Part shown: in pieces, positions 1,316 to 52,202 of the stretch
Position numbering within the stretch: position 1 is the stretch's first letter
Layout of the letters: each line of letters opens with the position of its first letter
DNA from: Octopus bimaculoides
Lineage: Eukaryota
NCBI RefSeq assembly: GCF_001194135.2
Contig: NC_068994.1
Span: forward strand, 25,484,944-25,537,755
Reading direction: 5' to 3'
DNA: 52,812 nucleotides
Notes under the pieces: generated by a model
The model's input: only the letters and a program-made list of their open reading frames with translations
The model's database searches: none
What the model was told of the DNA's origin: nothing
Program-made: the position numbers and the translations under genes

Positions 1316-1454
1316 ATTTGATCCAGAATCGACACAATAGTTTTGTGTTCAACTCCTTCAATCCACAGACGGCGTAGTTCATCTCTCTTACAGTGTAAAA
1401 GTGTCTTACAGGAACTGAGATCTTCTTTGATCTTTCGGATCTTGTCTCTAGATT
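1316..1454 (-). CDS. EXOC4: Exocyst complex component 4 (Sec8), internal coding exon, 139 nt, phase 1 to 2
   Basis: Reads (E)[45 protein letters not shown](I), close to the conserved EXOC4 segment [29 protein letters not shown]. Acceptor ttctatactcag, donor AT|gtaagt. Confidence 0.95.
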
Positions 1455-4182: not shown

Positions 4183-4271
4183 CAGAGACCATCTCAGAAA
4201 GGGTCTTGTCACTCTCCTGGAATGCTTTCTCAATACGAGTCTTCTCATTTTCCCGTTTGTCAAAATCAGAA
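4183..4271 (-). CDS. EXOC4: EXOC4 internal coding exon, 89 nt, phase 2 to 1
   Basis: Reads SDFDKRENEKTRIEKAFQESDKTLSEMVS, aligning with [29 protein letters not shown]. Acceptor ttcatttcag, donor G|gtatgt. Confidence 0.92.
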
Positions 4272-20060: not shown

Positions 20061-20101
20061 CTTGAAGACAAAGTCCTCACTATAGTCATCAAGAAATTAG
20101 A
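20061..20101 (-). CDS. EXOC4: EXOC4 coding micro-exon, 41 nt, phase 0 to 2
   Basis: Reads SNFLMTIVRTLSS(S), aligning with SGLLISVIRTLSTS. Acceptor cttctttttacag, donor AG|gtaaga. The phase joins the 4271 exon. Confidence 0.9.
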
Positions 20102-20933: not shown

Positions 20934-21823
20934 TTATTTAAACCAGAAAATCGTATGCCTAAGAAAATGGCTACATCTGAAAGCATTATATGTGAGTTTA
21001 TTTATTAACTTACCCTTAGAAAATAATATAAAAAATAATTCTAGATTACACAACGAGCAATATCTCTTACCTTTCTCATAAGGGAAAGACTTTCCAATAA
21101 TTGACCATTCTAATGAATATTGCTTTTTTTGTTCCTTCAGTTCCCAAATAAATTTACTAAGACTAGTATTCGACATTTTACTTCTATCTCTACATGTATT
21201 ATAATGATTTGATATTCGTTTACAAATTTGTCCTGAAGAACAACCCACGTATATGTTAACATCTGTTTGGGTCGTTAGCTTACATTGGTAAACTATATTC
21301 TTCAATCTAGCATTTGGGCCTTCAAACTTCAATCTTCTGGGGTTAACCTCTGTTACTGTAATCCTAGTACGATTATCATTATTATTATTATTATTTATAT
21401 CAGGGTTCTCATCACTATCCTCCCCAATTCCCTTTGATTTAAGTATTTTAAAATTATGAGCTGCAATTATTTGGGCTAAGTTCTTAGTGTTTGAGAAACT
21501 AAACCTAATGCTATGTGTATTAATAATTTTACCATAATGTGAATTCTTTGGGAAATATCTACTTATCACCTCTCTAAACTGTGCAATCAAATTCGATTTA
21601 ACATTTCTACCAAAAGGGATTATGAACCATACATTATTATCTTTAGTGTTATCGCAGTTATTTGTATAATTCTTAAAAAATTTTAAATTACCAATGTTAT
21701 GTTTATGAAAATCTCTGGGTTTATTTTCCATATTTCCTCTAAACTTATTCTTAAACTTATCATTCTTATAAGAATAATATATAAGAATAATAATGATAAG
21801 AATAATAAGTTTAAGAATGTAGT
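20934..21823 (-). mobile_element. Penelope-like element C-terminal region: uninterrupted GIY-YIG endonuclease ORF (265 aa from ATG at 21731)
   Basis: VWFIIPFG...RYFPKNSHYGKIINTHSIRFSFS...IVYQC..YVG...KRISNH...SLSKFIWELK...CSLCNLE...LINK...CSH, the typical PLE linker-plus-endonuclease layout. No stops over about 890 nt. Confidence 0.9.
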
Positions 21824-22007
21824 GTCTGCCTTTTACTCTGAATGAGAGGCCCTTTGTCACCAGCAGAGGTAAGNNNNNNNNNNNNNNNNNNNNNNNNNNN
21901 NNNNNNNNNNNNNNNNNNNNNNNNNNNNNNNNNNNNNNNNNNNNNNNNNNNNNNNNNNNNNNNNNNNNNNNNNATAACACAAAATTCTCATTCTTCAATT
22001 GCATGTA

Positions 22008-22879: not shown

Positions 22880-24330
22880 ACAATAAGTACAGTGAACTAG
22901 CAGTGGAGAGTGGAAAATTGAACATTTTGGAAGGAGTCCTTCAGGGAAAGGTTGAAAGGAGAGAAATTGAGACAGCAGAGTTTTACATCCTCTTGGTTGA
23001 AAAAAAAAAAAACTGGCTATAACTGCTAAGAAATGCAAGGGCCACATGAGCTTCATCATCATCATCTTTTAATGTCCATTGTCCATGCTGGCATGGGCTG
23101 GACGGTTTGACCAAGGCTGGTAAGCCGAGGGGCTGCACCAGACTCCAATCTGATTTAGCATGGTTTCTATGGCTGGATGCTCTTCCTAATGCCAACTACT
23201 CCAAGAGTGTAGTGGGTGCTTTTACATGCCATCGGCATTTCTTTACACAACTGTACTCGTCCATATGCATCACATAACCATACCAACACAGATGCTTCTC
23301 TTGCACACCACATCTGATGCCTCTTATGCCCAACTTTTCTCTCAAGACTCTTACACTCTCTTGTACATGCACACTGACATTGCACATCCAACGAAGCATG
23401 CTAGCTTCATTTCTTTCAAGCATATGCATATCCTTGGTGGTCACAGCCCATGTTTCACTACTGTGTAGCACAGCTGTTTGCACACAGGCATCATAAAATC
23501 TGCCTTTCATCCTTAGGGAGAGGCCCTTCATTGCCAACAGAGGTAGAAGCTCTCTGTACTTTGCTCAGCCAATTCTTATTCTTGCAGCTATGCTCTCAGA
23601 GCATCCACCACCACTGCTGACTAGATAATGGTAACTATCAACTATGTCTAGCTTACCCCACTGGCATTTGATGGAGTCTATTTTCTGTACACTTTTAGTA
23701 TTTATTGTACCTGTGCACAAAACCTATTTTCCTAGATAACCTTCCTCTGAGATTGCTGCACCTCTTGTGTCCATAGCTTCCACTGGGTACATCTTATGGA
23801 ATTTCTTCTCACACCTTTCCTACAGATTGAGCAGGGCCATTTACCTGAGGGGAATTGTGATTTACATGAAAAAATAGTGGTAGGAGAAACAGTATGAAAA
23901 GGTTGAAGGAAAGAGAAGCAGGCAAAATCAAGAGTGACATGAAGAGGAAAGATAAGGTTAGTGTGAGTTGAAGAATAAGATAGGGTTTAATGGAGTAATA
24001 GGAAGTGAAAGAAAAAGAAAAATGTTTATTTAAACCTGTTGATGATATGGTGCCAAGTTTGAATATGAAATACTGTTACTTCCACTTCCTTGAGAATGTG
24101 GATCCATAATGTGTAGTAATGCTGCACACTGATAAGTGAGTGATGGAATGGACAAGTTGACCTGGCATACATAGTAGTACACTTAAATGTGCTCCTGAAA
24201 GTGATCAACAAAGTGTCAGCCTGTTTCCTCAATGTAAAGGGCACTGCAAATTTTACATATGGTGCAGTATATAAGGATAGACAATGTGTAAAAGGTATTC
24301 TGAGTAATATGATATTGTGACATAAGCCCA
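22880..24330 (-). mobile_element. Decayed Penelope-like element (GIY-YIG plus 3' region), split by an RTE insertion
   Basis: LYIEETG*HFVDHFQEH (YIGETGR.L.DRF.EH motif) and FKLGTISSTGLNKHFSF. Both flanks of the RTE at 23052-23862 align with 2320-2660. Confidence 0.7.
23052..23862 (-). mobile_element. 5'-truncated, internally deleted RTE LINE
   Basis: KGLSLRMKGRFYDACV...LERNEASMLRWMC...LCWYGYV, with a (GAT)n tail. Confidence 0.85.
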
Positions 24331-25410: not shown

Positions 25411-28367
25411 CCATTTCCCCCATGCACACCCTCAAAACCCTGGATTCATTTCCCAGCATGTCCATTAAAATCAACCATACCTAAAACCAATTCATCTGCC
25501 TTTTGTAAGTCCCACTCATTTGCCATTTCGTCAAAGAACTGCTCTTTCTCAGCAATCCCTCTTCTACTTTGTGGACCATACCCACAAATCACCCTCACCA
25601 CTTATTCCTCAAATGCCAACACTACTGTCATTACTCTGTCACTCTTTCTCCTGACCTCCACAACCTTCTCACAGATTTCTTCCTTCACCAAAACTCCCAC
25701 ATTTCCAGACCATCACAACTTGTACCTTCTTTCCTTGACCCCCNNNNNNNNNNTGCACCATGGCCCCTCCACCTAACCTCTTGCACACAGCACACATTCA
25801 CCCTCGGCTTCTTCAATTCCTCACACACCTCAGTTCCACTTCCACACAGACTGCCCACATTCCAACTTCACATTCTCACCCCAAGCTTCTCCTCAGGCCA
25901 TCGGCCATCATAAGGCAAGTCATGCTTGTGCAACCCAAGATGAGGGTTTGCACCTTCCTTTTACAGGTAGGCAGGTGCAACTCACACCAACCTTTGGGCT
26001 GGCTAGTGCCCATTCTCCTTTGCTATTTTCTACGGGGAGCATGCCCTTGATTACCCCCAACGTCAGTTTCTAGATATGAGTGGTCCTGAGACCAAGGCCT
26101 CTACGATTTTTAAGAAATGTGGTGGAAAACTAGCTTGGGAAGGCAGGGACGCTACTCCCTGAGACCCCCTATATACATATAAAGGACAGATGGGGCTCCT
26201 TAGCCGTGGTGAAGGCAACCCATCTAGGAGAAACATACTATGATATAAAACCAAGTTTCTGATTACTGAAGGTCCCCTTAACAGAACTCTACCATCAACA
26301 AACCTTGACTCATAGGGTAGACTAGGCTCTCCAGCTTGTTTATAGCAGCTTGTCTAGGAGATGAAGACCTCTGAAAAAAGCCTGAAGTGCATTGTTCTTG
26401 GTATTGTGGCACATATGTACATCATATTCTTGCTATCATCACTTCTGGAAAGTGTTGCTGGTTCTACACAAGCCTTCACTAGTGTGGGTTTTCAGTAGCG
26501 CACAGTTCCACTTGAAAAAAGTCTTCTAGTGAGAGCATGAAAATGGTAGGGACAGGTAAAGGATATAACTGGAAGTCTTTTGCTGGATCTCTACACAGTG
26601 ACCATCGGTTGATGGTTGTTCTAGCACAGAACTCATGAGTAACTGTGCTGTCACTGTCCTTGAATGGTGACAAAGCAGCTTTATTTGAACACAGCTTAGC
26701 TTAGCTTTCCTCAACGGGGATGGGGGGGGGCAAAAAACGGAGCCCTAAGCATTGCTTACTCATCTTTAATTTGGCAGCCCACTGCATCTGTCTGGTTTTC
26801 CAGTAATGCAGTTGAAACATGAAGAACTGTAAAAAGAATACGAGTCTTGGTTCTTGGAACATTCACACTCTCCAAGGAAATCACTCAGCACCAGAACAAA
26901 AAACAGCACTGGTTACCCTTGAATAAAGTACAACATTGACATAGCCACACTCAGTGAAACTCGTCTTGCAGGATCATCACAGTTAAAAGAAAGCAAAGTG
27001 GATACGCATTTTTCTGGTCTAGAAGAAATGAGAATGAGCCATGGCACTCTGATGTTGGTTTCATCATCAGTGCTAAAATAGCCAGATCCCTTTCTTCTCT
27101 ACCCAAAAGTATTTCTGATTGGAACTTGATCAAAACACTTGCTCTACACTTGTCAAGCTATGCTCCATGGTCAGCTCTGAGCAGGGAAAGGGTAACTTTT
27201 ACAACCTACTCCATGATGTTATCTCCAGTTGTCAACATAGGTCTAAGCTTATTCTTATGGGTGACTTTAATGCTCATGTACACTTTATCAAACATGGGAG
27301 AGTGTACTTGGTCGTCATGGTGTAGGTTGAATGAACTCCATCTACAGGAAATTTGGTCTAAGCATCACAAATACCTTCTTTCAACAGCAAAATTGTTGCA
27401 AGATGACCTGGATGCATCCTAGATTTATGGATTGGCATCTCATAGAATATATTATCATTAAGAAGCAAGACATAAAGGACTTTAATACTACGCCTTCCTT
27501 TCATAGCACCTGCTTTCTCCCTGACCATTCTCTTCTTTGTAATAAGGATATGTTCCATCTGGAATACATGACTACAAAAGTCATCAGTGTCTAAGTCCAT
27601 TAATGTTCTGCCTTTGAAAACTGCTGAACTCTATAACATATTGTACACTACACCCAACACTGTTGACATCAGTAATAACATTGAATCATCTTGGAAGGCT
27701 CTGCATGATGCAACACACTCTGCATCTGCAGAGGTTCTTGGACTTCCTGCTCATAAACATCAAGATTAGTTTGATAATAACAACACAGATATCCAAAAGT
27801 TGATAGATAAAATACACAGCTCTCATAAAACATGGATCAATGACAAGAGCTCAACCAGAAAAACGAATGCTGATAAGAAATGCAAAGACTATGTCCAACG
27901 TGCTCTCAGACATGAAAGAGGCTTGGTGGTCATCCAAGGCTACTGAACTCCAAGAAGCTGCAGACAGAAAGGATTCTAAAGCCTTCTATGATGGCCTCAA
28001 GAGTACAGTGTTACTCCTATTTTTTCATCCATTGGAGAGGCACTGTTAGCTGACAAATCTGACATCCTAAAATGATGGAAAGACCACTTTGGAGCTGTGT
28101 TAAACTCTACCTTGGTCACTAATGACGATGATGTAATGTCTATTCTACAGTATGCTGAAATACTGGAATTGTCTCTGAAGCCAATCTTCCTGAAAGTGGT
28201 AAACTCTTTTATACAGATCTTTTCTGGTAAATAGCTGGCAGGGATGCTGTCCCACCTGAAACCTACATGCATGGTGGACAGAAGCTTTTCAAGAACTTGC
28301 AAGACCTATTCATAAATATTTGGAGGGTAGACCATGTAACACAGAACTTTAAGGATGTCTAAGTTTA

Positions 28368-28633: not shown

Positions 28634-29489
28634 GTTTAACACCTTTATAAGAAAGGAAACAGAAGTGTCTGTGATAATCATCATGGGATATCACTTCTGT
28701 CTATTGCTGGTAAGATTCTTGCTTGACTCATTCAAAATTAAGAGCTGTTCATGGTGTTCGTTGACCTAAGGCCTTCAACACTGTTAACTGACAAGCACTA
28801 TGGAAAGTTCTGAAAAAGCTTAGTATACCTGACAAAATGTTGAATGTTATCATCTTCTTTCATGAGGGAATGAAAGCTGCTGTCTTGTTACAAACAGAAC
28901 AAAGCAAGGTTGTGTCACAGCTCATTTTGTTTGCACTCTTCCTATCAGTGATGATGAAGTATGCTTTTGGTGACTTAGAAAGGGTGTTAAATTCCAGTTT
29001 CAAATTAGTGGACTATTCAGTCATGTGTTTCAATACCAAAACACTGTTACACACCAGTATCATTTGCGATTTGCTTTTTGCAGATGCTGCTGAACTAGTA
29101 GCAGCCTCTTTAGAGGAAACTCAGGAACTTCTAGACCAGTTTTGTGTTGCATGTAAAGCATTTGGTTTGACCATCAACATAAAGAAGACAAAAGTGATCC
29201 ACCAACCTTGCCCTACTCCTAAGCAAATTCGAGGTGTCAAGCAGAGGCTACTGCTTCACAATTTCCAACACTCATATACAGATTGATAGGAAAAACTTAA
29301 AGTGAAGTATTGACATATCTTGATAGTAAAGAGAACTTGAGTGCTTACCTTGATGATGAAATCACCATCCATCTTGCAAAAGCAACCAATGCATTTGGCA
29401 AACTTTGTCATTGCCTATGGAATGAAAGGGACATTAAACTGGACACTAAAGTACAGGTCTATAAAGCTGCTATTATTACTACTCCCTTA

Positions 29490-29696
29490 AGATGGTGAGC
29501 CAGTAGAATTGTTAGTGCACTGTACGAAATACTGAGCAGTATTTCATCTGTTGCAATTGCTCTGAGTTCAAAGTCCGCTGAGGTCAACTTTGCCTTTCAG
29601 GGTTGATAAAATAGGTACCAGTTGAACACTGGGATTGATGTAATCGACCCATCCCTACCTTCCCCCAAGCTGCCCTTATGGCAAAAATTTGAAATA
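29490..29696 (+). mobile_element. SINE with 18-bp flanking direct repeat
   Basis: ATTATTACTACTCCCTTA at 29472-89 and 29697-714, with a B-box (gagttcaaagtcc). Confidence 0.85.
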
Positions 29697-31099
29697 ATTA
29701 TTACTACTCCCTTACATGGCTTGAAATTGTGGACACCCTGTAGGTGGCACATTAACCAACTAGACATCTTTCACGAAGGATGTCTCAGAACAATCTGCAG
29801 TTATTCACTCAATAGCAAGCGTAGGATTGGTGAAATTGAAAGCTTCCTAATACAGTCACAAATGCACTGGGTTGGCCATGTCATCAAAACGAGTGACAAA
29901 AGTATATCCAAAATCCTCATGTACAGCCAATTTGATAATGGGCACAAGAATGTTGGTCAACTATGGCTCAACTATAAGGTCAAGCTGAAGAGTAACCTTT
30001 CAGCAGTCAATATAGCTCCCAACACCTTTGAATAAACAAAATGGAGATTCTTATGTCAAAATGGCATAAGAAACTTTGTTTCAACCAGCATTAATAGGCT
30101 TAGGGTTGCAAATATACTGCCTGCACTGACTTGTAATCTTCATACTTGCAACATTGGCGGGCTTCTTTGCAAATCATTGGCATGACTTAATACGTAAATT
30201 TCACATTTGACATGAGTATTATGACTGACAAAGAAAGTGTAGCTTGTTGGATCCTCATACGTTGAAACTGATAGGAGAGCCCATCGTATGTATGTATATA
30301 TATCTATAAATATAGGTATGTATATAGGTACACACATACATGTGTGTATACATTAAGTATGTAACATAGATGCGACTTTACTTTAATATATTAACTACAC
30401 CAATGTGTATGCCATAAGCTGAAAAACTGGTGAGTCAAAGAAAAGTGCCTAGTGGTATTTAGTTCAGTTACACTGAAATGATCACATTTGATAAAATAAG
30501 TACCAATAAAATACTGGCAGCAATAACATCAACTGAAAAAACTTCAAAGGTAATGTTCCATCATGGCTGCAATGACTGAAACTAGTAAAGAAAATACTAG
30601 TTTATTTTTTTGTTCCAGTGTGATGAAATGGTATGTTTGTCAAGTAGAAACCATGATGAGAAAATGTCAAAAATATTAAATAATTCTAATTAACAAACTA
30701 TGTACTTTATCTGCAAACTAGTTGCTTCTTGAATTCTTTGAAGAAATACCTTACTCAAAGTATTACATATTTCAGTACTATTTTATTCATTTAAAGTTAT
30801 AAAGTGATATTAATACCCACTCACATGAAAAATTTTTAAACAAAATTTTTTATATGATTTAGGAATGTTTTTTTTTCCAAGTGTTCTGCATTAGAGGAAA
30901 GACAGTGACCATAATTTCTTTGATAAACCTGATCTTCAGCTTGAAACTCGTAGGTGGAGATGTTCCAGAGTGAGAAGGTTGCGCATGAGTTTAGTAGAGT
31001 TTTCTGTGTGTCCAGTTACTTTTCTTGGTGGCAGGCATCAGCTAAGTAATCTTTCTAACATGTAATCTTTAACAAACAGCAGTAAGGAATGACACATTT

Positions 31100-33547: not shown

Positions 33548-33870
33548 CTATATATTTATTATAAGCAGTTATCTCATATTTTAACTGATAAATTAAAAAA
33601 CAAAATAATAAAAGAAACTACATCAATAAATGGATATAAACACATGTAAATTAAGAAAGAGAGAGAGAGAGGAAAAGGAAATTAATTTTCGTATTACAAA
33701 TTAATGACAAAATACATATAGAAAAATATCATTACTGAGTGATATGATAAATTACTATAAGTTAGTTTCTCCAAACTATACTTGTTATTCATCTGATGAG
33801 GTAATTTTTTTCATTAAAATTTTTTTAAAAATTTATTTCAACAGTTAAAATATAAGACAACCTTAGTAAC

Positions 33871-34236
33871 CTATTGCTTTTCATCTTGCTCAATGTTAGA
33901 GTTTCTTTTGTTTCCACTGATTTTCATTTTACTTGTATAATCTGCCAGAATGTCAGCAGTCACCTCGTCATATTTTTTCCAGATCCTTTCCACATTAGCC
34001 TCATAAGTTGCCAGGGAATCTGCAACTCTCTTGTGGTATTCTGTAACAGCTTCTGGAGATTTTTCACTTTCCATTAACATCAAAGCAACCTTTAGTGAAT
34101 TTTCATAAGCTAAACGCAGCACATCCATGTGTTGCTGGTGTTTGTCATACATGACAGAAAGCTTCTGTTCAAACACCTGCCGTGGGCCATGGTAAGAGCC
34201 ACCCCAGCTACGCCATGTGGAAGATTTTTTCATCAT
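33871..34236 (-). CDS. Unidentified 121-aa, largely helical-looking ORF in a spliced terminal exon
   Basis: Strong acceptor (T11-C6-atttccag) opens an exon at 34322. The first ATG in the exon (34236, A at -3) starts MMKKSSTWRSWGGSYHGPRQVFEQKL...DEKQ*. AATAAA lies about 35 nt after the stop. Composition is non-repetitive and protein-like, but no family was recognised. Confidence 0.65.
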   Translation of the reverse strand: MMKKSSTWRSWGGSYHGPRQVFEQKLSVMYDKHQQHMDVLRLAYENSLKVALMLMESEKSPEAVTEYHKRVADSLATYEANVERIWKKYDEVTADILADYTSKMKISGNKRNSNIEQDEKQ

Positions 34237-35814
34237 CTTTATGCTTTCCACCAGGAGTTGTGCAGATGAAAAAAGAATAAGTGTTGAAGATAAAAGTCAG
34301 CAAATATGAAGTTGGTTTAGATCTGGAAATGGGGGGAAAAAAAAAAAATCAAATATTATTATAATAGTTTTACAGTTATATACAAGAATGTGTTTACAAG
34401 AATACACACACACATAATTACATACATTGTCACTCTCATCAATTTTGTCAGTGTACTATGGACAAAAATTTTGTCAACTGAGAAAGACAATTTACATGAT
34501 AAATAAAGGTTTATTTATTTTCTGTTTTATATTTAAAATCCAAGAAAATATTGCTTAGTTTTCTTTTGTTGTTATCATTTAATAATTAAACTTCGTTCAT
34601 GTACTAAGATTATCTTCCATTTTATTCAATGTGATTTTCAGTTCATAGAAAGGATACACTCACATGTGTGTATATTTGTTTTTTTAAATATATTTTGAAC
34701 ATTTGAAATATTAATCTAAATGACTGAAATGTGTGTTATAGAAAAACTTTTTAAAAAGGGTTTTCAAAAAAAGACTTAGAAGGGAAACAATTATACATGA
34801 TGGCAGACCAATGCTGAAATTACCTAATTTGCAAAGTTCCAACAAAGAATGTATCAAACAATTATAGATTAATTTATATGAAAGAAAAAAAAACAAAAAA
34901 ACAACGTTAACTGGAAATGCTAAGCTTAATAAGTTATTTAGTTTAGAAAAAAACTGTTTGAATTGATAAAGGTTACAATGGTATAAATATTCTACATATG
35001 GCCACGCTAAACATGAACATTCCCAAAGACATAAAATCTTTGGTAGATTCACATATATTTACAATTAGATGCACACAAAAGATAGAGCATACAACAGTGT
35101 GATGAAGAAGTTAAAACAGCTATTCTGTGATGATTGACATGGCCATCCGTTGATATGTCCTGCATTATGACAACGTCTTTGTTTAATGGTAGCACGCAGA
35201 CTTATTATAATTATTTTTTGTTCCATACAGAACCAGATTTTTTTTTCTTCAAAATGCTACAGGTAGTACCAGTCTACATTGTTTACTGGTAGCACTACTA
35301 CATATAGTGACCTGACTTAAATCCTTTGCACGGACTTATTATTTTTCACTGTGTGTAGTTCAGTTCTGTGTTAGAGTTCCAGTTTTATCAGACATTTTTT
35401 TTCTTCAGAATCTTTTTTTATATATTTTTCACTGTGTGTAGTTCAGATCCCACCTTGGGATTTTTAACATTTTTTCACTATGTGAGCTCTGAATCCTTGT
35501 TGCTATTATGACGATGTATTTCATCATCTTCATGACTGGCCTGTACAGTGTACCTTGCTGACTGACGCTACTTACTGTGTCTGTCCACTATTTATTAGTA
35601 GTGGACTAGCCCACTCCTCAGCTGAGGGTGTCCACCACAACATCCATACATACAGGCATGTCCTTCACATACACACACACACACATAATCTGTCCTCTGT
35701 TGCACCCACAACCCACCCCACCTATTTCTCTCTCTCTCTCTCTGAATACCTATCTTTCTAATTCTATCTCTCCAGTTCTAATTCTATCTCTCCAGTGTTT
35801 CTTTCCATACAGCT

Positions 35815-36914: not shown

Positions 36915-39900
36915 TAGTGCTACATAAATGTGAAGATGGTAACATGAAGGCCATGGTTCATACGTCATGCTTGCTCCTGCAGAAAAATATTACAGCCATG
37001 TTGCAAAAGAGGCTCTAGCGATAATTTTTACTGTAAAAAAAATTTCAGATTTTTATACGGCAGAAATTTTCAATTACAGACTGATCATCGTCAGTTATTA
37101 TCTATTTATGAATAAAAGAAAGGAATTTCATATGCATACTACTAATAGGTTGTAATGCTGGGGTACTATATTACTAAACTATGATCTTAAAATGGAGTTT
37201 ATACCATCTAAGAAATTAGGACATGCTGATTGTTTATCAAGATAGATATAAAAAAATACTGAACCATTTGAGGATATCGTGATTGCTGTGTTGTGAGCAG
37301 AAAATGAAATTAAAAATGTTTTATGTAATGTCATATGTGAATTACCAGTTACATTACAAGACATAAAAGTAAAAGTGGAAAACAAATTTATCGAAAATAT
37401 GAAAGAAATGCTGAGGGCTGAAGAAAAAGATATAAAAATATTCCTTTTGCTAAAAGCAACACAAATACAAACCTGTTCTCAATTTGTGACAATATGTTAA
37501 TGTACACACAACAAGTCATTGTGCCAGCCACACTACAGAAGCATTTACTAAAGGAATTTCACATTGGTCACCTAGGGATTTCAAGAATGAAATTGTTAAT
37601 GCGAAGTTATATATATATTGGCCAAGAATGGACCATGACACTGAAGAACTAGTAAAAGCATGCAAAGGTTGTGCACTAGCAACAAAATCACTTACCACAA
37701 AATGGCAACTGTGGCCAAAAAACAGATATCCCATGGTCCAGACTGCATTTTGATTATGCAGGTCCACTTAATGGTTCATATTACCTGGTTGTGGTAGACA
37801 GTTTTTCTAAGTGGCCTGAAGTGCATAAGTGTAAAAAGCCAACATCTATGGTTACAGTAAGTTTTTTATTGGGCTGGCAACTAAGTTAACGCCGTTTTTT
37901 TAAATTTTGGAATTCATTGCGTTTTTAAAGTTTGGAATCTATTTTTGAATCATTTTGGAATCTTTTTTTTTTTTTCCAAGTTAATTTTAGTTAATTTTTG
38001 TTTATTTTCAGATCATTAAAATGGAATGTCAAATTAAGAAAAACAAGCATTTTCAACACCTCCTTTTTGCTTTTAATCAAGGTTCTAAGGCTGCAAAAGC
38101 TGCTCGCAACATTTGTGCTGTGTATGGAGAGGGTGTCATAGCTGAACGAACCACTCGTGATTGGTATGCCAAGTTAAAAACTGGAAATTTTGACCTCAAA
38201 GACGCACTTCGTTCTGACCGTCCAGTTGAGTTTGATGAAGAGCGATTAAACCAACTTTTGCACGAAAATTCTCGTCAAACAACAAGGGAACTGGCAGAGA
38301 AAATGGAATGCTCCCACACTGCTATAGAGAAGCATCTTCACTCGATGGGAAAGATTCAGAAGTATGGAGCATGGATTCCACATGCTTTAAGTGACAACAA
38401 CAAAAATCAATGAGCCACAATCTCCACTGCTTTGCTTGCTTGTCACCACTCAATTCATGGTCACTAACATTGATTTCTTTACCGAATCGTTACTGGCGAC
38501 GAAAAATGGTGCCTGTACATCAATATGAAGCAGCTTAAAGAATGCCTTCACCCCGGTAAACAAGCGACACCGTGCGTAAAACAAGATCTAAAACGATGTT
38601 GTGTGTATGGTGGGACTGGGAAGGGATTATCCATTATGAATTGCTTGAACAGAACCAAATGGTCAACATGGAACTCTATGTTCAGATGGAACAACTCAAC
38701 ACAGCTATTCAAGAGAAAAGACCTAATCAGCAACATGGAGTTCTTCTGCTGCATGACAACGCCCACCCTCATATCACCAATATGACCAAGGAAGCCATTC
38801 AAATGCATGGCTGGGAAGTGCTGCCACACCCACCATACTCTCCTGATTTGGCACCAATGGATTTCTACCTCTTTCAAATGCTATGCACGGAGTTTCATTC
38901 AATACTGATGCAGAATTGAGAGCTTGGTTGGATCAATTTTCCAAGCCGAAATTGGGTGATTTCTACCAACAAGGTATTGAAAATCTTGTTGAACGTTGGG
39001 AAGAAGTTGTAAACAACAAGGGTGAATACATTATTGATTAATTAGTTGTTATTTTTTTTATTAAACCTTGTAAAAAATAAAAATTTTAAAAAACGGCAGG
39101 AACTTAGTTGCTAACCCAATACATGAACTGTTTGCCAAATATGGTATTTGTGATACCATTATGTCTAATACTAATAATGGAATGTGACCACTCTGCCATA
39201 TCATCCTGGGTCAAATGGACAGGTGGAGTGCTTTGTCAATGCTTTTAAGAGGGCTTTAAAGAAGGTGAACAATGAAGTAATGGATGATCTAGCACTTCAA
39301 CAATTCCTAAAAGTATACCAAGTAACACCTAATCCAAATACCCTACCCTGTCTTGAATGTCACCTGCAGAAGTAATGTTCGCTTGTGAGATGAGATCTGT
39401 CTTTGACAAGTTGTTACCAAGTAAAAAACAGAAAAATGGTGAACAACAATTATAATTCAAACTTTTTCAAGATAGGTGACAAAGTTTTTTGAAAACATAT
39501 AGAAATGGTAAAGCAAGCTGGGAAGATTGTGTAATTATTAAACAAATTGGGAAAATGTTATTCTTGGTAAAAGGAAAAAATTTCAAACATAAAAGACATA
39601 TAAAGCAACTTAAAAAAAGATTTACGGAAGAAATGGTCATGAGAGATGAAATTCCCATGGAAGTTTTTTATGACACCTTTGAGGTACCAACACCCAAACA
39701 AATTGAAACTACACGATCAAGTATCAGAAAAAGGAAAAGAATGGAAATTCTGGAATTAGACCTTAAGCATAAGAGTTATTAAACTCTAGACAGAGTTTAA
39801 TTCTCAAAAAGAGGGAAAGTTATGGAAGGGTCCTGACCACCCCCACATGACTGAAAGTGGACTAATGCATTTCAATAGAATAAAGAAACTGTGTGAACAT

Positions 39901-40999: not shown

Positions 41000-43800
41000 G
41001 TCTGGCTTTCCATTGCTATTGTTTCTCCTCCTCTTTTATTATTCTTTCCCTTTTAAACAATTTTATGTTATTGTTTATGTTTTGTCAGTAGTCAGAATGG
41101 TTGATTATGGTTGTCTTAAAAGCCAATGGGTTGAAGATAGATTGCTTCAGAGTTGACTGTAGATTGCTTCAGTGTTGAAGAGGGGCTCCTCTTTGTCTTT
41201 TCCCAGTTGGCAGTTCACTAAAGAGGATTTGACAAGGAAGATGTTCATTGTTCATCCTGGTGCCATTGTCAGCCCATCAAAGAATATGTTTGATGATTAG
41301 GGATTCAATGCTCTGGCTATTCACTCTTTCCATTATGGAGTTATTGGAGACATACAAGGTGGTATCAAGAAGTTCCTGGTCTAGTTCTGTAGTACACCAA
41401 CAGATGGCAGCACATGGTTGGGTGCACAGTGAAAACTATCAGTGACCCTCATGAGGTAGTGTGCCGAATGACATTGTGGTGTTTACTTTGCAAGTAGTGA
41501 AATTTGTGTTTTTGCAATCATGTGTATGTAGTCTGTGATTTTTGCCATGGACAGGAAGTTAGAAGAGCCCAATGTGAAATTTTGTGTTAAACTTGGGAAG
41601 TCTGCCACAGAGACATTGAGCATGCTTTGGCAAGCTTATGGCAACAAGGAATGGGTTGTACACAATGTTTGGAGTGGCACAGGCACATGACAGAAATGCA
41701 TCTCAATCAAGAGCATGCTCATTGTTTTTTTTTATATCCATGGTATTGTGCAACGAGAATTCGTCCCCCATAGCTGGACCATCAATCGTGAATTCTACTG
41801 TGACCTTCTGAAGCATTTAAGGGGGGACATTCAGATCTGTGGAGTGCAAAGAATTGGGTTCTTCACAACAACAATGCACCCTTTCACTGAGCTCTTCTTC
41901 CTTGTGAGTTTCTCGCCAAACACAACATGATATCACTTCCAAAATTACCCTAATCACTAGATTTAGCAACTGCAAACTTCCATCTCTTCCTCAAGATGAA
42001 AATGCAGCTCAAAGTTGCTGTTTTAACACCATTGTTGAAATCAACAATGAATTGTTGAAGGTCCTCGACTTGCTTACAGAAATCAACTTCCAGGCCAGAT
42101 TCCGTAAGTGGCAGGAACGCTGGGACTGGTATATTCTGCACAAAGTGACTATTTCAAAGCTTAGATAAATGAGTTATTTTTTTATCAAACATAACTAGTC
42201 CAGGAACTTTTTGATACCATCTTATAGTAAAACCACTTGATGTTCAAAAGAGAGCAAAGTTTTGGTTGATAAAAGTGTTCAAATCTTTTGATGTCACATT
42301 GATACAAAGTTCAAGTTTCACAAACATATAATAGCATGGATATGACAACAGCTTGGTAGACGATAATCTTTGTCTTCAAAGTCAGGTCTTTGTTTTTGAA
42401 TACATGATTTGTTAGTTCACTGAAATCTGAGTAAGCTGATCTGATTATTCATTTCACATCTTGCTTACAATTGCATTTGGTAGAGAGCACACTTCCAAGA
42501 TATACAAAATGATTAACTTACTCCAGTAATGAGCCCAAAATGATGTTAAAGTGCTAAAGGGCAGAATTTGGGGTTGTTTGGGCAAGGACTTGAGTTTTTT
42601 TAGTAGTTACAGTGAGCCTAAAACATAGATATGCATTGATGAAATTATTGACAACTTGTTGCAGTTCTAAGCTTGAGTGACTGTTGTCATCAGTCTACTA
42701 TTCTGAGATTCGCTTGGTACTGGTGAGATTCTTTGACCAAAACCTCACCAGGTTGAAGAGTCTGCCATCAGGCAAGGTATAGGAAGAAAAACATAGGAGC
42801 GAGAATGCAATCTTGTTTCAATCTACATATAATTGGGAATTCTTCTTAGAGTTGATCACAATGATAGACACATCCAGTCATACCATCATGCTTGGATCAG
42901 TGAGATGAAATAATCAGGACAGTTAAAACGATTAAAAACCATCTACATGGTTGGTCTCAGTATGCTGTCAAAAGCTTTTTCTAAATCATAGAAGATAAGG
43001 AAAAAGGATTTTTGTTGTTCTTGACACTTCTGTTGGATTTGTCTGGTACAGAAGATCATGTCTATGACTCCATGGGATGCCTGGAAACCATGCCAAGATT
43101 CTGGAATGACTTCTTTTATGATGACCTGGAAACAGTTCAAGAGCATTTGAGCAAAGATCTTTTCTGCAATAGCAACTAGCAAGATTCCACAATAGTTTCC
43201 ATAGGATCTTTTAACTCCTTTCTTGAATATATTGATGATGATGGTATCTTCGAGATCATTTGGGACCTGATGTGCTTCCCACATATTTAGGAACTGGGTG
43301 AAGAGCTTAGTTTGCAGCAGCAATCTGCTATGTTGCAGCAATTTCAATGGGATATTATTGGGCCCTGGGCTTTTCTTACTTTCATATATTTCATTGCATT
43401 CCAGAACTCTTGATACAACAGGTTGTAATGGATGGAAAGGGACTTTGTTGGTGAAGCAAAGACCTAAATTGTCATTGTTTCTGGTTGGTAAGTATACAGT
43501 TTACTCCATGGACATCATTTTTGTGAAATCAAGCAGAGATTCTGCTTGATTGTGCTTTTTGCATGTCATTCCTGACATTATATCACCTTCTGCCCATCTG
43601 ATGTTAGATGGAATAACAAATTGACAGAGTGTACATCACATCCAGAAAAAAGGAGGAGAAGACCATGCAGAAGTTGGAATAACAACTTTGTCAAATTCTC
43701 TGGCACCTAACATAGATAAATAAACATCAGACTGTGGTTGGTGGAGAGAAAATGCTTTGTCCAGTAGTGGACCAAACATGTGCAAGGATGATGTAACTTG
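41000..43800 (-). mobile_element. Decayed RTE-BovB-like LINE split by a mariner
   Basis: GNYCGILLVAIAEKIFA...GFQASHGVIDMIF...FYDLEKAFDS. Excising the mariner restores LNIKWFY|YVSNNSIMER. The ends are approximate. Confidence 0.8.
41355..42224 (+). mobile_element. Internally deleted mariner (870 bp)
   Basis: TIRs caaggtggtatcaagaagttcctgg and ccaggaactttttgataccatctta, TA duplication at 41353-54 and 42225-26. Motifs NVKFCVKLGKSATET, FFYIHGIV and a decayed PSLDLA. Confidence 0.9.
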
Positions 43801-45244: not shown

Positions 45245-45650
45245 TAGGCACAGGCTGTGTGGTTAAGAAACTTACTTTGCAAACAATAAGTACAGGATGT
45301 GTGGTTAAGAATCTTACTTTGCAAACATGTGGTTTTGGATTCAGTACCACAGCTTGGTACCTTGAGCAAGTGTCTTCCACAAGAGCTCCAGACTAATTAA
45401 TCCTTCTGAGTAAATTTGGTAGATCAGAAATTGTGTGGAAGTCTGTTGGATGTGTGTGTGTGTATCTTTGTGTCTGTTTGTCCCCTGCCACCGATTGACA
45501 CAAGCGTTGGTTTGTTTAGGTCTCCAGAACTCACTGGTTCGGTAAAAGAAACCAACAGAATATGTACTAGAGTTGATTTGTTCGATTACACTTCAATACG
45601 GTGCTCAGCATGGTCGCAGTCCAGTGAATGAAACAAGTAAAAGATAAAAG
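45245..45650 (+). mobile_element. tRNA-derived SINE with a ~42-bp tandem duplication in its head
   Basis: acagg(c/a)tgtgtggttaagaa(a/t)cttactttgcaaaca occurs twice, followed by caccttgagcaagtgtcttc and the family body. Confidence 0.8.
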
Positions 45651-46026
45651 ATATGGCTTATATGTTTGTGTTTCTATATATATGCGCGCATGTATAATTT
45701 CCTTCTAGCCAAAATTAATTTATAAATTTGCTTCCCTATATATTGCTCTGTCGTTCCTAAAAAAGCGGAGGAGAAACAAAGTATATTCTGTTGAACTAAT
45801 TATTATGGATTAAATGTTAATTTACTCTCAAATTTATCTTTTGAGTTCTTCATCTGTAAACTTGCCACCCTCCTTATAAATACACACTTATATACACTCA
45901 TATGCATGTGTATCGTAAGCATTCTTATAGAGACGAAAATATCGAGTGCACCCAATATCACAATTTCTTTGGATCTATATATGAAGGAATTGTGTAAATA
46001 AATTATGAGATTTCCGTCACCCTTAC

Positions 46027-46062
46027 CGCAATTTTTCGGCCGTGATCTTTAGTTATTAACAT
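46027..46062 (-). CDS. EXOC4: Candidate first coding exon of EXOC4 (MLITKDHGRKIA, phase 0)
   Basis: aaaATG in a CpG-enriched unique region, with a strong donor GCG|gtaagg. Phase 0 joins the 20101 exon in frame. There is no sequence homology to support it, so this is inferred. Confidence 0.5.
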
Positions 46063-47623
46063 TTTCACATTTATTTTTTAAACATTTCAGGTTATAATAC
46101 TTAAAAACTATGCAGCGAACTTCTTGAAATATGTACCTTTAACCAAAAATCGCCAAATATGCCTAATATAAATCCCGTCCTCCCTCCAAAAATAAATTTC
46201 TGGAAAAATGTCCGGTGGAGGGGACACAAAACGAGGTGCTTTTTCTGCATTTTTGACTTTGAAACACAAAAATAAAATTTTTTTAATGTTCATTACCTTA
46301 CAAAAACTATATCAGCTAAGCAAATGAACCTTCCCTAAATGCATTAAAAGCATAACGACATAATCTGATAACTATTTCAGAAAATTATCACCGTTCTCTG
46401 AGCATATAAAACACAAGTTTGGCGGGGGTAAAACGAGTAAGTCAAGATAAGGTAAACTTGCTGCTTCAATTCTCCAAAAAACAGACTCATACACATCAAT
46501 ATCCATTCCTAGATATCAAAAAGATTAGATATGTAAAAAAAAAAAGAAATGTATATCTAGGTCAAATGAAAGAGGATCAGGGGAAAATGGCACATGGTAT
46601 GAAATCAACGAAACTCGACTAAACAGAAAATAAAACAATTCAACATAAAATATCACCTATAGCTTTTTCACGATCTGCTGAAGTGTCTTTATGATTGATA
46701 CATTTACACACCATGCAGTTAAAGAGAAATTATTGAAATTAGCCATTACTCATTTTACCCCCTTTTAGACATCATTTTGTGAAACTTCAAAATGATCAAA
46801 TTAGACATTAGTGTGGAAAGAAATTGACTTGGAATCCAACAAAAAAGAATATTGATTATTAAACAACAAAAATTATCGGCATAAAAGTTATGACCTCCCA
46901 AAGTCTGGGGGGTAAAACCCTGTAGTTATGCCAAATTTATCTAGGTATTTTATTAGCAATTACAATTACAAAGTTGAAAAATTACTTGGAAAAATAGGAC
47001 CTGCCATTTGACTGTTTCGGACTCTCTCAACATCGTTAACAATAACAATGTTGACTAATTTTTACTTCTAAAGATGAAAACAGTACAAAATGATGATGCA
47101 ATACTTGCAGTGTAATGATTTCAAACAGGTAGAGAGGAAATAACCAGAAATCAAAAGTTTCTCATTTTGCCCCACCCACCTAATGAAGTTTGAGAGAAGG
47201 AAGCAGTTAAAAATTTGAACACGAAACGTGCTAAAAAAAGTTTTTTTCTTTTGTAAATTCCTTATTTATGTATTTGTGATTTTTTTTGGTGCAATATGTA
47301 ATTTTCGACTCTATTCTACAGGAATTTATATGTATGTAATATTATTATTCCAGGAAGTAATAAGTTCAAAAAGTAGGTATGTTTAACCATAGTGAAATAC
47401 AATATATATTTTGCCAAACTAACGATTATATATATATATAATTTATACACAAATATATATATTTACATACACGCACACGTGTGTGTGTGTATGTATATAT
47501 ATATATATATATTCTTAAAACTAACTCTATTCTAAAAGTGGGTGTGTATATAAAACAAAATGCTTCGCAAGTTTAAGCCATAAAAGGAAGGCGATGAAAT
47601 GAATTTATATATACATATATGAA

Positions 47624-47668
<45 letters not shown>

Positions 47669-47692
47669 CACTGTTGAAACTGTTTTCCTTAC

Positions 47693-47790
47693 CGGTATCT
47701 AAAAGTTGCGATCTGAGGATCCAATGCCGTTATATAGCAATAAATTTTCCTGAGACGAACCGCTTTGCGAACACTAGTTTAGAAAACTTG
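47693..47790 (-). other. Candidate non-coding 5' exon in a CpG-containing island
   Basis: Strong donor CCG|gtaagg at 47693, no ATG, and local CpG enrichment. The 5' boundary is unknown. Confidence 0.35.
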
Positions 47791-48206
47791 CCAAGCCCAC
47801 TTACACATTTCTCCTTCTCCCTCCACTCTCTTTCCCTCTCTCTCTCTCTTGTTCAACATAGAAACTTGCTTTTCTCACTCACTCTTTTACTCCCCTCTAT
47901 CTTTCACCTACAAACTCTCTTTTATTACTTTATCTCTAATACTTGTTTAACAAGTACCTCTCATTTTCGCTTAACTTCTTACTCTCCCTTATACTTCTTT
48001 TTGAGTAACATTCAGTCTCTCTCTGTCTGTCTCTTTCTCCCTATCTTTCTTTCTCAAACACTTTAATCTTGTCTAACATCTACGCTCACTCTCTCATATG
48101 TCATTAGCCGCTCTCTAATACTATTTGCTGCTCATTTACTTTTCCTATATCTTATTAATTCTTTGTCACACACACATTCTCTCTCTCTCTAATACTTCTG
48201 AAGTTC

Positions 48207-50189: not shown

Positions 50190-50479
50190 GCCTTGTGCTA
50201 ATGCTTACATATTTTTTCACAGGAATTCAAGTTGGTGGTAAAAAATTTATTAGATAAGATGGATCAGGACCACATATTCATATGTTAAGTATTTAAGTAA
50301 TGCAAACATTATGTTGTAAGAAAAGTAAGAGAGGATGTCGGGCATAGTCAACCTTGGCGGAATCTGAACTCAACGTAAAGACGGATGAAATACTGTTAAG
50401 CATTTTGCCAGGCATGCTAACATTTCTGCCAGCTTGGTGCCTTAATAATGACAAATATTTGGCTACATTGGCTACATAA

Positions 50480-51328
50480 CAAATATTCGGCTACAGTGGT
50501 AACATCGACAACACCCCCTCCACATCCTGCAATAACATTACCAACGCCACCCCCACCCCCACCTTTGCCAACACGAACACCAACGGCCTCAGCAACACTA
50601 TCGTTGACTGCAGCACCAGCAACAGTGACATTGTCAATCCCCGCAGCATCATTGTCGACAGCACCTGCAACAACAACAATAACAGCAGCAGCAGCAACAC
50701 TAGTAGCAGTGATGGCAGCAACAGCAGCAACATCAACATCGGCAGGCTTAGTAACACCAACACATGTACCACCAGCAACACACGCAGAGGTAGTAATACT
50801 ACCAATGCAACCACCACCTCCAGTGTCACCACCACCAACAGCCCCAGCTCCAGCAACACCAGAATCAACACCATCAACAGCAGCAGCAGTAGCAGCAACA
50901 ACAACAGCAATGGTAGGCACAGCACCGACTCCACACATCCAAGGAAATACATTGGATGCCCGGGAACTTCCTTTAAGAAACGCCTTTCCAACCATAGATC
51001 CTCCTTCAGGATCCTAGAAAGGAGATGTGCAACATCGCTGGCCAGCCATATCTGGAAACTGAAGGAAGATGGAATTCCATATGCGATAACATGGAAAATC
51101 CTCCATCGTCTGGGTCCATACATAAATGGAACAAAACGCTGCAAGCTATGCATAGCCGAATACATGGAAATCCTGAAAAAGTCACATGTACCAGGGTCCA
51201 TACTGAACTCCAGAACGGAGATATTCGGGCCGTGCTTGCATTTCAGAAGGTTTCTGTTAGTGTTTTGGGAACTGCATAATAGCAATATTAGCGGTATTAA
51301 CAATAATTACACCACAGCTAGATATTGA
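50480..51328 (+). mobile_element. Penelope-like remnant: S/N/T-rich linker fused in frame to the C-terminal part of a GIY-YIG nuclease
   Basis: Open frame of 282 codons with no upstream ATG. YIG at 50948 is followed by CPGTSFKKRLSNHRSSF...SLASHIWKLK...RCKLCIAE...ILNSRTE...CLHF. The GIY half is missing. Confidence 0.85.
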
Positions 51329-52000: not shown

Positions 52001-52042
<42 letters not shown>

Positions 52043-52120
52043 GGCTTCTTTCAGCTTTCGTCTACCAAATCCACTCACAAGGCTTTGGTTGGCTCGAGGC
52101 TATTGTAGAAGACACTTGCC
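51765..52120 (-). mobile_element. tRNA-derived SINE (same family as 43856 and 45245)
   Basis: ctaccaaatccactcacaaggctttggttggctcgaggctattgtagaagacacttgccc, internal (TA)n and the family 3' end. Confidence 0.85.
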
Positions 52121-52202
52121 CATTAATGTACGTTTGTATGTATATATACATGTGTGTATGGATATACATATATATATATATATATATATGTGTATTTCTA
52201 TA

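What the first reader, a model, noticed from the sequence alone, without database searches (positions are those of the whole stretch)
33835..34345. Unidentified small gene apparently nested on the same strand within EXOC4 intron 1
A strong acceptor, an 86-nt ATG-free leader, a 121-aa non-repetitive helical-looking ORF and a nearby AATAAA lie between the candidate EXOC4 first exon and exon 2. If the 46027 donor splices here, the EXOC4 start becomes a 13-codon uORF (…ATT GCG|ATC TAA) ahead of this ORF, so one promoter would yield either Sec8 or a different protein. Alternatively the 47693 donor makes two interleaved genes.
Basis: partly seen in the sequence, partly recalled or inferred. Interest (0 to 1): 0.75.

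Follow-up and report, generated by a model that had tools for sequence, protein, structure and literature searches.

The report
Cephalopod-only small gene beside EXOC4
The 121-codon reading frame is a real, selectively maintained gene for a small two-helix protein found only in octopuses, argonauts and cuttlefish-like cephalopods, but the idea that it shares a promoter and first exon with EXOC4 (Sec8) has no support from relatives.

Summary
These are a T13C6ATTTCCAG acceptor ending at 34323, an 86-nt ATG-free leader (34322-34237), a 121-codon ORF (34236-33874, stop 33873-33871) and AATAAA at 33837-33832.

The ORF is a genuine gene. It is intact in three Octopus species, Argonauta hians and two more distant cephalopods, one of them Sepia esculenta RNA-seq. 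Protein identity runs 98/75/50-53 %, and dN/dS is 0.12-0.18. The CDS is far better conserved than its leader or intron. Sepia contigs show splicing exactly at the homologous acceptor.

No relative was found outside cephalopods, and there was no significant Pfam, PDB-sequence or fold match. AlphaFold2 gives a soluble helical hairpin.

It lies 5' of confirmed EXOC4 exons (20101-20061, 4271-4183, 1454-1316). In Argonauta the annotated EXOC4 start lies downstream of the small gene, so the two are tandem, not nested. The O. vulgaris EXOC4 model does not span the small gene. In Sepia its first exon abuts IFT52 head to head.

The true exon 1 was not found in this window, which has assembly gaps. The nesting and uORF-switch ideas remain untested.

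The parts
34323..34345 (-). Polypyrimidine tract plus CAG 3' splice site in front of the coding exon
   Evidence: Sequence. The same tract+CAG is kept in O. vulgaris, a third Octopus sp., Argonauta and the Sepia-type genomic-like contig L006. Sepia-type cDNA contigs diverge from L006 exactly here.
34237..34322 (-). 86-nt ATG-free 5' leader (untranslated part of the coding exon)
   Evidence: It evolves almost neutrally: 89 % identity to O. vulgaris, and 69 % with 18 gap positions in the alignment to the third Octopus sp., against 98.6/96.2 % and no indel for the CDS. There is an A at -3 of the ATG in all taxa.
33871..34236 (-). Coding sequence of a 121-aa (14.2 kDa) soluble helical-hairpin protein, stop codon included
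   Evidence: ORF. Orthologues. dN/dS is 0.12-0.18, and dN is 0.16 with saturated synonymous sites against Argonauta. Structure. No hydrophobic segment.
33832..33837 (-). AATAAA polyadenylation signal
   Evidence: Kept in O. vulgaris and the third Octopus sp.. Argonauta has AATAAA about 85 nt after its stop.
20061..20101 (-). EXOC4 (Sec8) 41-nt phase-0 microexon encoding SNFLMTIVRTLSS; context, not part of the small gene
   Evidence: All 7 nucleotide differences from Argonauta are synonymous, including codons upstream of the internal ATG. Translation must therefore start in an upstream exon.
4183..4271 (-). Next EXOC4 coding exon (SDFDKRENEKTRIEKAFQESDKTLSEMVS); context
1316..1454 (-). Further EXOC4 coding exon ([45 protein letters not shown]); context
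   Evidence: Fragments matching it carry Pfam Sec8_N and the name exocyst complex component 4/Sec8.
46027..46062 (-).
   Evidence: Sequence. CpG o/e is 1.15 against a window median of 0.23. Largely single-copy. No similarity to a Sec8 N-terminus, nor to Sepia or Argonauta upstream sequence.
47693..47760 (-).
   Evidence: Sequence. CpG o/e is 1.3. Single-copy.

Best explanation
This is an independent, taxonomically restricted protein-coding gene of coleoid cephalopods.

Gene structure. The whole 121-codon coding sequence sits in the last exon. That exon is joined through a conserved 3' splice site (34322) to one or more non-coding 5' exons lying far upstream in Octopus. Those 5' exons were not identified here; candidates are at 47.7 or 46.0 kb, or beyond the window. 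The mRNA ends shortly after the AATAAA at 33837-33832.

Product. The protein is 14 kDa and hydrophilic, with no signal peptide and no membrane segment. It has a conserved, disordered N-terminal motif (MMKKSxxWRxWGG..HGPRQVFEQK), followed by two long antiparallel helices and a conserved SG.KR near the C-terminus. The most likely mode of action (inferred, not shown) is as a small coiled-coil adaptor or subunit that packs its hairpin against partner helices in the cytosol or nucleus.

Relation to EXOC4. The gene lies directly 5' of EXOC4 on the same strand. The most likely arrangement is tandem, with the gene upstream of the true EXOC4 first coding exon, as annotated in Argonauta. It has its own promoter, as in Sepia, where the first exon is head to head with IFT52.
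For: Shown:
- The ORF is intact in six genomes or transcriptomes, with 98, 75 and 50-53 % identity and 50 invariant positions.
- dN/dS is 0.12-0.18 in the three unsaturated comparisons, and dN is 0.16 with saturated synonymous sites between Octopus and Argonauta.
- The CDS is 98.6/96.2 % identical without indels. The leader is 89/69 %, the intron 77/61 % and the 3' flank 91/84 %.
- It is transcribed and spliced. Contig L007 comes from Sepia esculenta RNA-seq run SRR20545809. cDNA contigs L002, L003, L005 and L007 replace the polypyrimidine-CAG seen in genomic-like L006 with exon sequence exactly at ATCT, which is homologous to window 34322.
- An alternative first exon in L003 is contiguous with the 5' end of an intron-less IFT52 CDS on the opposite strand, 73 nt from its ATG.
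- It is single-copy and not part of a repeat.
- No relative appears outside cephalopods among 1.84 billion representatives.
- AlphaFold2 gives a hairpin with mean pLDDT 82. The highest 19-residue hydropathy is 0.83.
- In Argonauta the order is small gene, then annotated Sec8 start, then microexon.
- O. vulgaris lists no EXOC4 range over the small gene.
Against: - No transcript of this Octopus species could be reached, so the use of the 34322 acceptor here rests on homology, and the 5' exon is unknown.
- No homologue of the Argonauta EXOC4 exon 1 was found between 20101 and 33870.
That pattern would fit a nested arrangement in Octopus.
- The annotations of Argonauta and O. vulgaris are automatic gene models whose RNA support I could not check.
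- The function is pure inference from a generic fold.
Confidence: 0.8

Rival explanations
1. Reader's main model. The small gene is nested in EXOC4 intron 1 and shares EXOC4's promoter and first exon (46062-46027). Splicing that exon to 34322 turns the EXOC4 start into a 13-codon uORF ahead of the small ORF. Splicing it to 20101 makes Sec8.
For: - The exon is in phase 0 with the microexon, has an A at -3, a GTAAGG donor, and lies in a CpG-undepleted, largely single-copy island.
- An upstream coding exon is required, because codons before the microexon's internal ATG are under synonymous-only change.
- No other exon 1 was found in the assembled window.
Against: - In Argonauta the annotated, Sec8-like first coding exon lies downstream of the small gene.
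- The O. vulgaris EXOC4 model does not span the small gene.
- MLITKDHGRKIA lowers rather than raises similarity to a Sec8 N-terminus.
- The Sepia first exons are non-coding and belong to a promoter shared with IFT52, not visibly with EXOC4.
- There is no sequence conservation of the exon in Argonauta or Sepia.
Confidence: 0.08
2. Nested or interleaved, but with separate promoters. EXOC4 starts upstream of the small gene in Octopus (for example at 46.0 kb), and the small gene uses another first exon (for example the non-coding exon with donor 47693, or one beyond the window). The small gene's coding exon then sits inside an EXOC4 intron.
For: - Two separate CpG-undepleted islands lie at 45.6-46.4 and 47.2-47.8 kb, and there is none between 20.1 and 33.9 kb.
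- The 47693 exon is non-coding, like the Sepia first exons.
Against: The same annotation evidence from Argonauta and O. vulgaris as above. The assembly gap at 21874-21973 could hide the true EXOC4 promoter and exon 1. Strand and ownership of the two islands are unknown.
Confidence: 0.2
3. The small gene is a diverged partial duplicate of the 5' end of EXOC4, either a Sec8 N-terminal helical region or an overprinted frame.
For: - The leader 34336-34274, read in another frame, gives PPISRSKPTSYLLTFIFNTYS, against Argonauta Sec8 PPVAKSRDTSNFLMTIVRTLS (tblastn E 0.03 in the window).
- The family profile aligns positions 63-92 with human EXOC4 62-90 at 4.8 bits.
- Argonauta's protein hits Pfam Sec8_C at E 0.0046.
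Against: - The leader is not similar in Argonauta, and carries 18 gap positions in the alignment to the third Octopus sp. and near-neutral divergence within Octopus.
- 60 of 2000 shuffles reach 4.8 bits.
- The Sec8_C hit is below the cut-off, occurs in one of five members, and is no better than unrelated hits.
- The two similarities are not collinear in spacing.
Confidence: 0.04
4. It is not a functional gene: a chance ORF, a pseudogene, a transposon fragment, or a long upstream ORF or 5' exon of EXOC4 mRNAs.
For: Many long ORFs occur by chance or from transposons in this window. A GT follows the stop codon in Octopus.
Against: - Conservation with purifying selection holds from Octopus and Argonauta to Sepia-type cephalopods.
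- The gene is single-copy.
- The GT after the stop is absent in Argonauta.
- The Sepia cDNA contigs continue into a 3' UTR.
Confidence: 0.02

Closest known systems
Taxonomically restricted ('orphan') small protein genes of animals
   Same: Short single-domain helical protein. No detectable homologue outside one clade. Annotated only as hypothetical or uncharacterised. Under purifying selection within the clade.
   Different: It is old and well conserved for an orphan: shared from Octopus and Argonauta to Sepia-type cephalopods, with 50 invariant residues. It has a canonical spliced 5' UTR, and its position next to EXOC4 is kept in the two octopod genera examined.
Same-strand nested genes or genes sharing a first exon with a host gene
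   Same: Same strand as EXOC4, lying 5' of confirmed EXOC4 exons, with a long intron upstream of its coding exon. A candidate upstream exon is in frame with the EXOC4 microexon.
   Different: No upstream EXOC4 exon is demonstrated. In Argonauta the EXOC4 start is downstream of the small gene, so there the two are plain tandem neighbours.
Divergent (head-to-head) gene pairs with a bidirectional promoter
   Same: In the Sepia-type transcript contig L003, one first exon of the small gene starts within 73 nt of the IFT52 start codon on the opposite strand.
   Different: IFT52 was not found in the 18.5 kb upstream in this window, nor in the 10 kb upstream in O. vulgaris and Argonauta.
Exocyst subunit Sec8/EXOC4 N-terminal helical region
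   Same: Neighbouring gene; both are long-helix proteins; weak local resemblances.
   Different: No significant sequence or profile similarity. The fold match is generic.

Membership tests
Functional protein-coding gene (as opposed to chance ORF) | Open frame kept in distant species, with substitutions biased to synonymous sites | tested here: met
   Six intact orthologues. dN/dS is 0.12-0.18. CDS identity is 98.6/96.2 % against 61-91 % in the flanks.
Functional protein-coding gene (as opposed to chance ORF) | Transcribed and spliced mRNA | tested here: met
   Met for Sepia esculenta RNA-seq (L007, SRR20545809) and the other cDNA-type contigs. Not testable for the species of the window.
Functional protein-coding gene (as opposed to chance ORF) | Translation: peptides or ribosome footprints | not testable with these tools
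   No proteomic or Ribo-seq resource available.
Taxonomically restricted gene family (coleoid cephalopods) | No homologue outside the clade at profile sensitivity | tested here: met
   A profile search of 1.84 billion representatives returned only cephalopod members plus one tandem-repeat artefact. Pfam and PDB gave nothing above noise. Nautilus and other molluscs could be under-sampled.
Gene nested in EXOC4 intron 1 / sharing its first exon | A host-gene exon upstream of the nested gene as well as downstream | tested here: inconclusive
   Downstream exons are confirmed. The upstream exon is only a candidate. In Argonauta the feature is not met, because the Sec8 start is downstream of the small gene. 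The O. vulgaris model does not span it.
Gene nested in EXOC4 intron 1 / sharing its first exon | Junction reads from one first exon to both acceptors (34322 and 20101) | not testable with these tools
   No Octopus transcript data reachable.
Sec8/EXOC4 family (Pfam Sec8_N PF04048, Sec8_C PF20652) | Score above the family's gathering threshold, or significant profile similarity | tested here: not met
   No Sec8_N hit. Sec8_C scores 16.8 bits against a cut-off of 25 in one member only. The family profile scores 4.8 bits against a human N-terminus, reached by 3 % of shuffles.
Secreted peptide / neuropeptide precursor (considered because of the conserved SG.KR) | N-terminal signal peptide and cleavable G-K-R sites | tested here: not met
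   The N-terminus is basic and hydrophilic. The highest 19-residue Kyte-Doolittle value is 0.21-0.83, and there is no contiguous GKR.
Transposable-element ORF | Multiple copies, or transposon protein domains | tested here: not met
   Single hit in the window and in each relative's locus. No Pfam domain. One protein cluster per lineage.

The most novel reading that the evidence does not exclude
In Octopus, unlike Argonauta, EXOC4 transcription starts upstream of the small gene. One first exon (46062-46027) is spliced either to 20101, giving Sec8, or to 34322, giving the small protein with the Sec8 start demoted to a 13-codon uORF. A housekeeping exocyst gene and a cephalopod-only microprotein would then be alternative outputs of one promoter.
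Probability: 0.08. Interest if true: 0.6.

Novelty: new member of a known kind. Interest (0 to 1): 0.3.

Why it matters
It adds a well-supported example of an old, conserved, clade-restricted small protein in cephalopods. Public annotation carries it only as 'hypothetical', and no paper was found linking cephalopods with EXOC4. Its conserved N-terminal motif and clean helical hairpin make it a tractable candidate for finding a cephalopod-specific partner or complex. Its neighbours, EXOC4 in octopods and IFT52 in Sepia, both act in membrane or ciliary trafficking and give a first place to look. For annotation, it shows that the 5' end of EXOC4 in this assembly is unresolved and that the tempting 12-codon 'first exon' should not be accepted without RNA evidence. 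If the shared-first-exon model were true it would be an unusual alternative-product locus, but present evidence is against it.

Tried and rejected
1. Pfam on the ORF and all family members returned only sub-threshold, mutually unrelated hits. PDB sequence search with the single sequence found nothing. The profile search gave a best hit of DNA polymerase beta at E 0.14, which is noise.

2. Foldseek against PDB found no match with E below 0.3. The top matches are designed helical bundles, and a few axonemal inner proteins appear at E above 1. This is a generic hairpin result.

3. Homology to EXOC4 was rejected on four tests:
- The leader-frame resemblance (E 0.03) is absent in Argonauta, and the leader is indel-ridden within Octopus.
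- The profile against a human N-terminus scores 4.8 bits, p about 0.03 by shuffling.
- The Sec8_C hit is at noise level.
- Short N-terminal constructs gave no Pfam hit at all, so Pfam could not discriminate between exon-1 candidates.

4. Locating the small gene's first exon by homology failed. Sepia exon-1 sequences and Argonauta upstream sequence against the window gave only poly-T or microsatellite matches.

5. Locating EXOC4 exon 1 in the window also failed. tblastn with the Argonauta exon, phase-0 ATG...GT scans and a K-S-K/R-D motif scan found nothing convincing. A candidate at 36999-36964 (MAVIFFCRSKHD) lies in AT-rich sequence with no aligned counterpart in O. vulgaris L001.

6. IFT52 was not found in the window, in O. 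vulgaris +-10 kb or in Argonauta +-10 kb.

7. The second and third protein-database searches, with EXOC4 fragments, returned only exon-sized fragments or nothing. No full-length cephalopod EXOC4 N-terminus was obtained.

8. Hit P0005 of the profile search is a PVMTDYKELLK tandem-repeat artefact.

9. An exact look-up of the window's own protein in transcript assemblies found no record.

10. Rfam found no RNA family in the window.

11. Literature: no paper holds both 'cephalopod' and 'EXOC4'.
Full report
**Observation.** On the minus strand the window reads T13C6ATTTCCAG|ATCTAAACC..., with the exon starting at 34322. An 86-nt leader without any ATG follows, then ATGATG at 34236. The frame is open for 121 codons to TAG at 33873-33871, and AATAAA lies at 33837-33832. 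ORF length by itself means little here. The window has 91 ORFs of at least 70 aa, many from transposon remnants and low-complexity DNA.

**Is it a gene?** Yes.
- A search of 5.8 billion proteins found only four clusters: Octopus vulgaris (98 %, 'hypothetical predicted protein', CAI9732806.1), Argonauta hians (75 %, 'hypothetical protein'), and two clusters known only from assembled sequencing runs (50-53 %).
- A third Octopus species was recovered as genomic contigs L009 and L010, with the complete frame.
- One of the distant clusters comes from Sepia esculenta RNA-seq: contig L007, run SRR20545809, identified through PMC9538352.
- The alignment has 50 invariant positions, concentrated in an N-terminal motif MMKKSxxWRxWGG..HGPRQVFEQK, in YEN, NVER and a C-terminal SG.KR.
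- Nei-Gojobori dN/dS is 0.16, 0.12 and 0.14 among the three Octopus species, and 0.18 between the two distant species. Between Octopus and Argonauta synonymous sites are saturated while dN is 0.16.
- Within Octopus the CDS is 98.6 % and 96.2 % identical with no indel. The leader is 89 % and 69 % (18 gap positions), the upstream intron 77 % and 61 %, and the 3' flank 91 % and 84 %.
- The sequence is single-copy in the window and in each relative's locus.

**Splice site.** The polypyrimidine tract plus CAG is kept 60-86 nt upstream of the ATG in all three Octopus species, in Argonauta and in the Sepia-type genomic-like contig L006. Contigs L002, L003, L005 and L007 share the downstream sequence with L006. 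They replace the tract with other sequence exactly at ATCT, where only the AG is shared, and those sequences end in ...GAAG, as exon ends do. Exon 2 starts with ATCT in both Sepia and Octopus.

**First exons in the Sepia-type species.** Two alternative non-coding first exons are seen.
- Exon '1b' is in L005, L007 and L002.
- Exon '1a' in L003 is contiguous with the start of a complete intron-less IFT52 coding sequence on the opposite strand. That CDS encodes 437 aa with IFT52 Pfam domains, and exon 1a lies 73 nt from its ATG.

The simplest reading is a head-to-head pair with overlapping 5' ends. IFT52 was not detected in this window (18.5 kb upstream), nor within 10 kb in O. vulgaris or Argonauta.

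**The protein.**
- It has no Pfam family, no PDB sequence relative, and no relative outside cephalopods in a profile search of 1.84 billion representatives. The one extra hit there is a tandem-repeat artefact.
- AlphaFold2 on the five-sequence alignment gives mean pLDDT 82 and pTM 0.63. Residues 1-14 and 112-121 are disordered, and two long helices (18-58, 61-118) fold back as a hairpin.
- Foldseek against the PDB returns only generic helical hairpins and bundles, with best E 0.3.
- The protein is hydrophilic (GRAVY -0.9), 14 kDa, with no hydrophobic stretch that could be a signal peptide or membrane segment.

From this I infer, but cannot show, a soluble coiled-coil adaptor or small complex subunit.

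**Relation to EXOC4.** EXOC4 exons lie on the same strand downstream of the small gene.
- A 41-nt phase-0 microexon at 20101-20061 encodes SNFLMTIVRTLSS.
- An 89-nt exon lies at 4271-4183.
- A 139-nt exon lies at 1454-1316.

All seven differences between the Octopus and Argonauta microexons are synonymous, including codons upstream of its internal ATG. An upstream coding exon must therefore exist.

In Argonauta the annotated Sec8 gene (970 aa, Sec8_N and Sec8_C) starts at L008 15316. That is 5 kb downstream of the small gene and 2.9 kb upstream of the microexon. Its first exon ends ...PPPVAKSRDT|. The O. vulgaris locus (+-10 kb, corresponding to window about 42.9-22.9 kb) lists only the small gene and no EXOC4 range across it.

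**What remains open for this window.**
- I could not find a homologue of the Argonauta exon 1 anywhere in the assembled sequence.
- Runs of N lie at 21874-21973 (100 N, about 1.8 kb upstream of the microexon, flanked by repeats) and at 25744-25753.
- CpG observed/expected is 0.23 at the median. Outside young transposons it rises above 0.75 mainly in two places, 45.6-46.4 kb (1.15) and 47.2-47.8 kb (1.3); two weaker single windows at 48.2-48.6 kb (0.76) and 52.0-52.4 kb (0.80) were not examined.
- In Argonauta the whole stretch from just upstream of the small gene to the EXOC4 5' end is CpG-undepleted.

So promoter-like islands do exist upstream of the small gene in Octopus, and the 46062-46027 exon is the best in-window candidate on intrinsic signals. 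Whom these islands serve cannot be decided without RNA data. My probability estimates:
- About 0.65-0.7 for a tandem arrangement, with EXOC4 exon 1 in or near the gap.
- About 0.2 for nesting with separate first exons.
- Under 0.1 for a shared first exon with the uORF switch.

**Is the gene derived from EXOC4?** Three faint resemblances were followed and rejected.
- The leader read in another frame resembles the Sec8 N-terminus (E 0.03). It is not conserved in Argonauta and is evolving neutrally with indels in Octopus.
- The family profile against the human N-terminus scores 4.8 bits, which 3 % of shuffles reach.
- One member hits Sec8_C at E 0.0046, below the cut-off and no better than unrelated hits.

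**Verdict.** The 'nested in EXOC4 intron 1 / one promoter, two proteins' part is unsupported and is contradicted in the closest annotated relatives. The finding is a solid but ordinary kind of object: a conserved clade-restricted small gene next to EXOC4.

Noticed in passing
window 20061-20101 (-): EXOC4 41-nt microexon. All seven differences from Argonauta are synonymous third-position changes, also upstream of its internal ATG, so the true start codon lies in an exon that was not found in this window.
   Followed up: yes
window 45600-46400 and 47200-47800: Two AT-rich but CpG-undepleted, largely single-copy islands (o/e 1.15 and 1.3, against a window median of 0.23). They are likely unmethylated promoter regions; strand and gene are unknown. 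The second has TATATAA and ATTGG about 30-45 nt upstream of the donor at 47693.
   Followed up: partly
window 21874-21973, 25744-25753, 1531-1588: Runs of N (assembly gaps). The first is flanked by repeat-like sequence with an inverted repeat and lies where the EXOC4 first coding exon would be expected from the Argonauta spacing.
   Followed up: partly
L003 264-1650 (Sepia-type transcript contig): A complete IFT52 CDS lies on the opposite strand, contiguous with an alternative first exon of the small gene, 73 nt between the IFT52 ATG and the splice junction. This suggests a head-to-head pair with overlapping 5' ends in decapodiforms.
   Followed up: partly
L004 1-1440 (Sepia-type contig): This contig has the identical CDS, but its upstream sequence diverges inside the leader, 24 nt before the ATG, with no AG at the break. 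It could be a second copy (5'-truncated retrocopy), an insertion polymorphism or an assembly-graph artefact.
   Followed up: no
window 34274-34336 (-): The acceptor and leader, read in another frame, give PPISRSKPTSYLLTFIFNTYS, which resembles the Sec8 N-terminus across its exon 1/microexon junction (tblastn E 0.03). Judged to be chance because it is absent in Argonauta and the leader evolves neutrally.
   Followed up: yes
window 38021-38919 (+): Mariner/Mos1-type transposase remnant (HTH_48, Transposase_1) with high CpG content, so probably a young insertion. It lies within window 36.6-40.5 kb, a stretch with no aligned block in the O. vulgaris locus L001 in my comparison.
   Followed up: partly
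window 8200-9250, 12000-13300, 16100-18000, 23200-23540, 28800-30050, 42900-43350: Retroelement fragments fill the introns. The ORFs at 16522-16896 (RVT_1) and 17574-18005 (DUF7083) gave Pfam hits; the ORF at 8221-8745 was scanned and gave none; the other intervals were judged reverse-transcriptase-like by eye and not scanned.
   Followed up: partly
window 20934-22004 (-): A 356-aa ORF spans the N gap, with no Pfam hit. Its C-terminal part looks like a small nuclease-type domain of a mobile element (by eye only).
   Followed up: partly
window 50400-51300: GC-richer cryptically simple region (CAN-type codon runs) with ORFs of 190-270 aa open in several frames on both strands. There is no Pfam hit and no clean tandem array.
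   Followed up: partly
window 52042-52122; L001 4742-4822; L008 9634-9714: An 80-nt repeat (SINE-like) is shared by Octopus and Argonauta. In Argonauta one copy, which contains a consensus GTGAGT, sits just upstream of the small gene's CpG-rich, CCAAT-box-bearing region.
   Followed up: no
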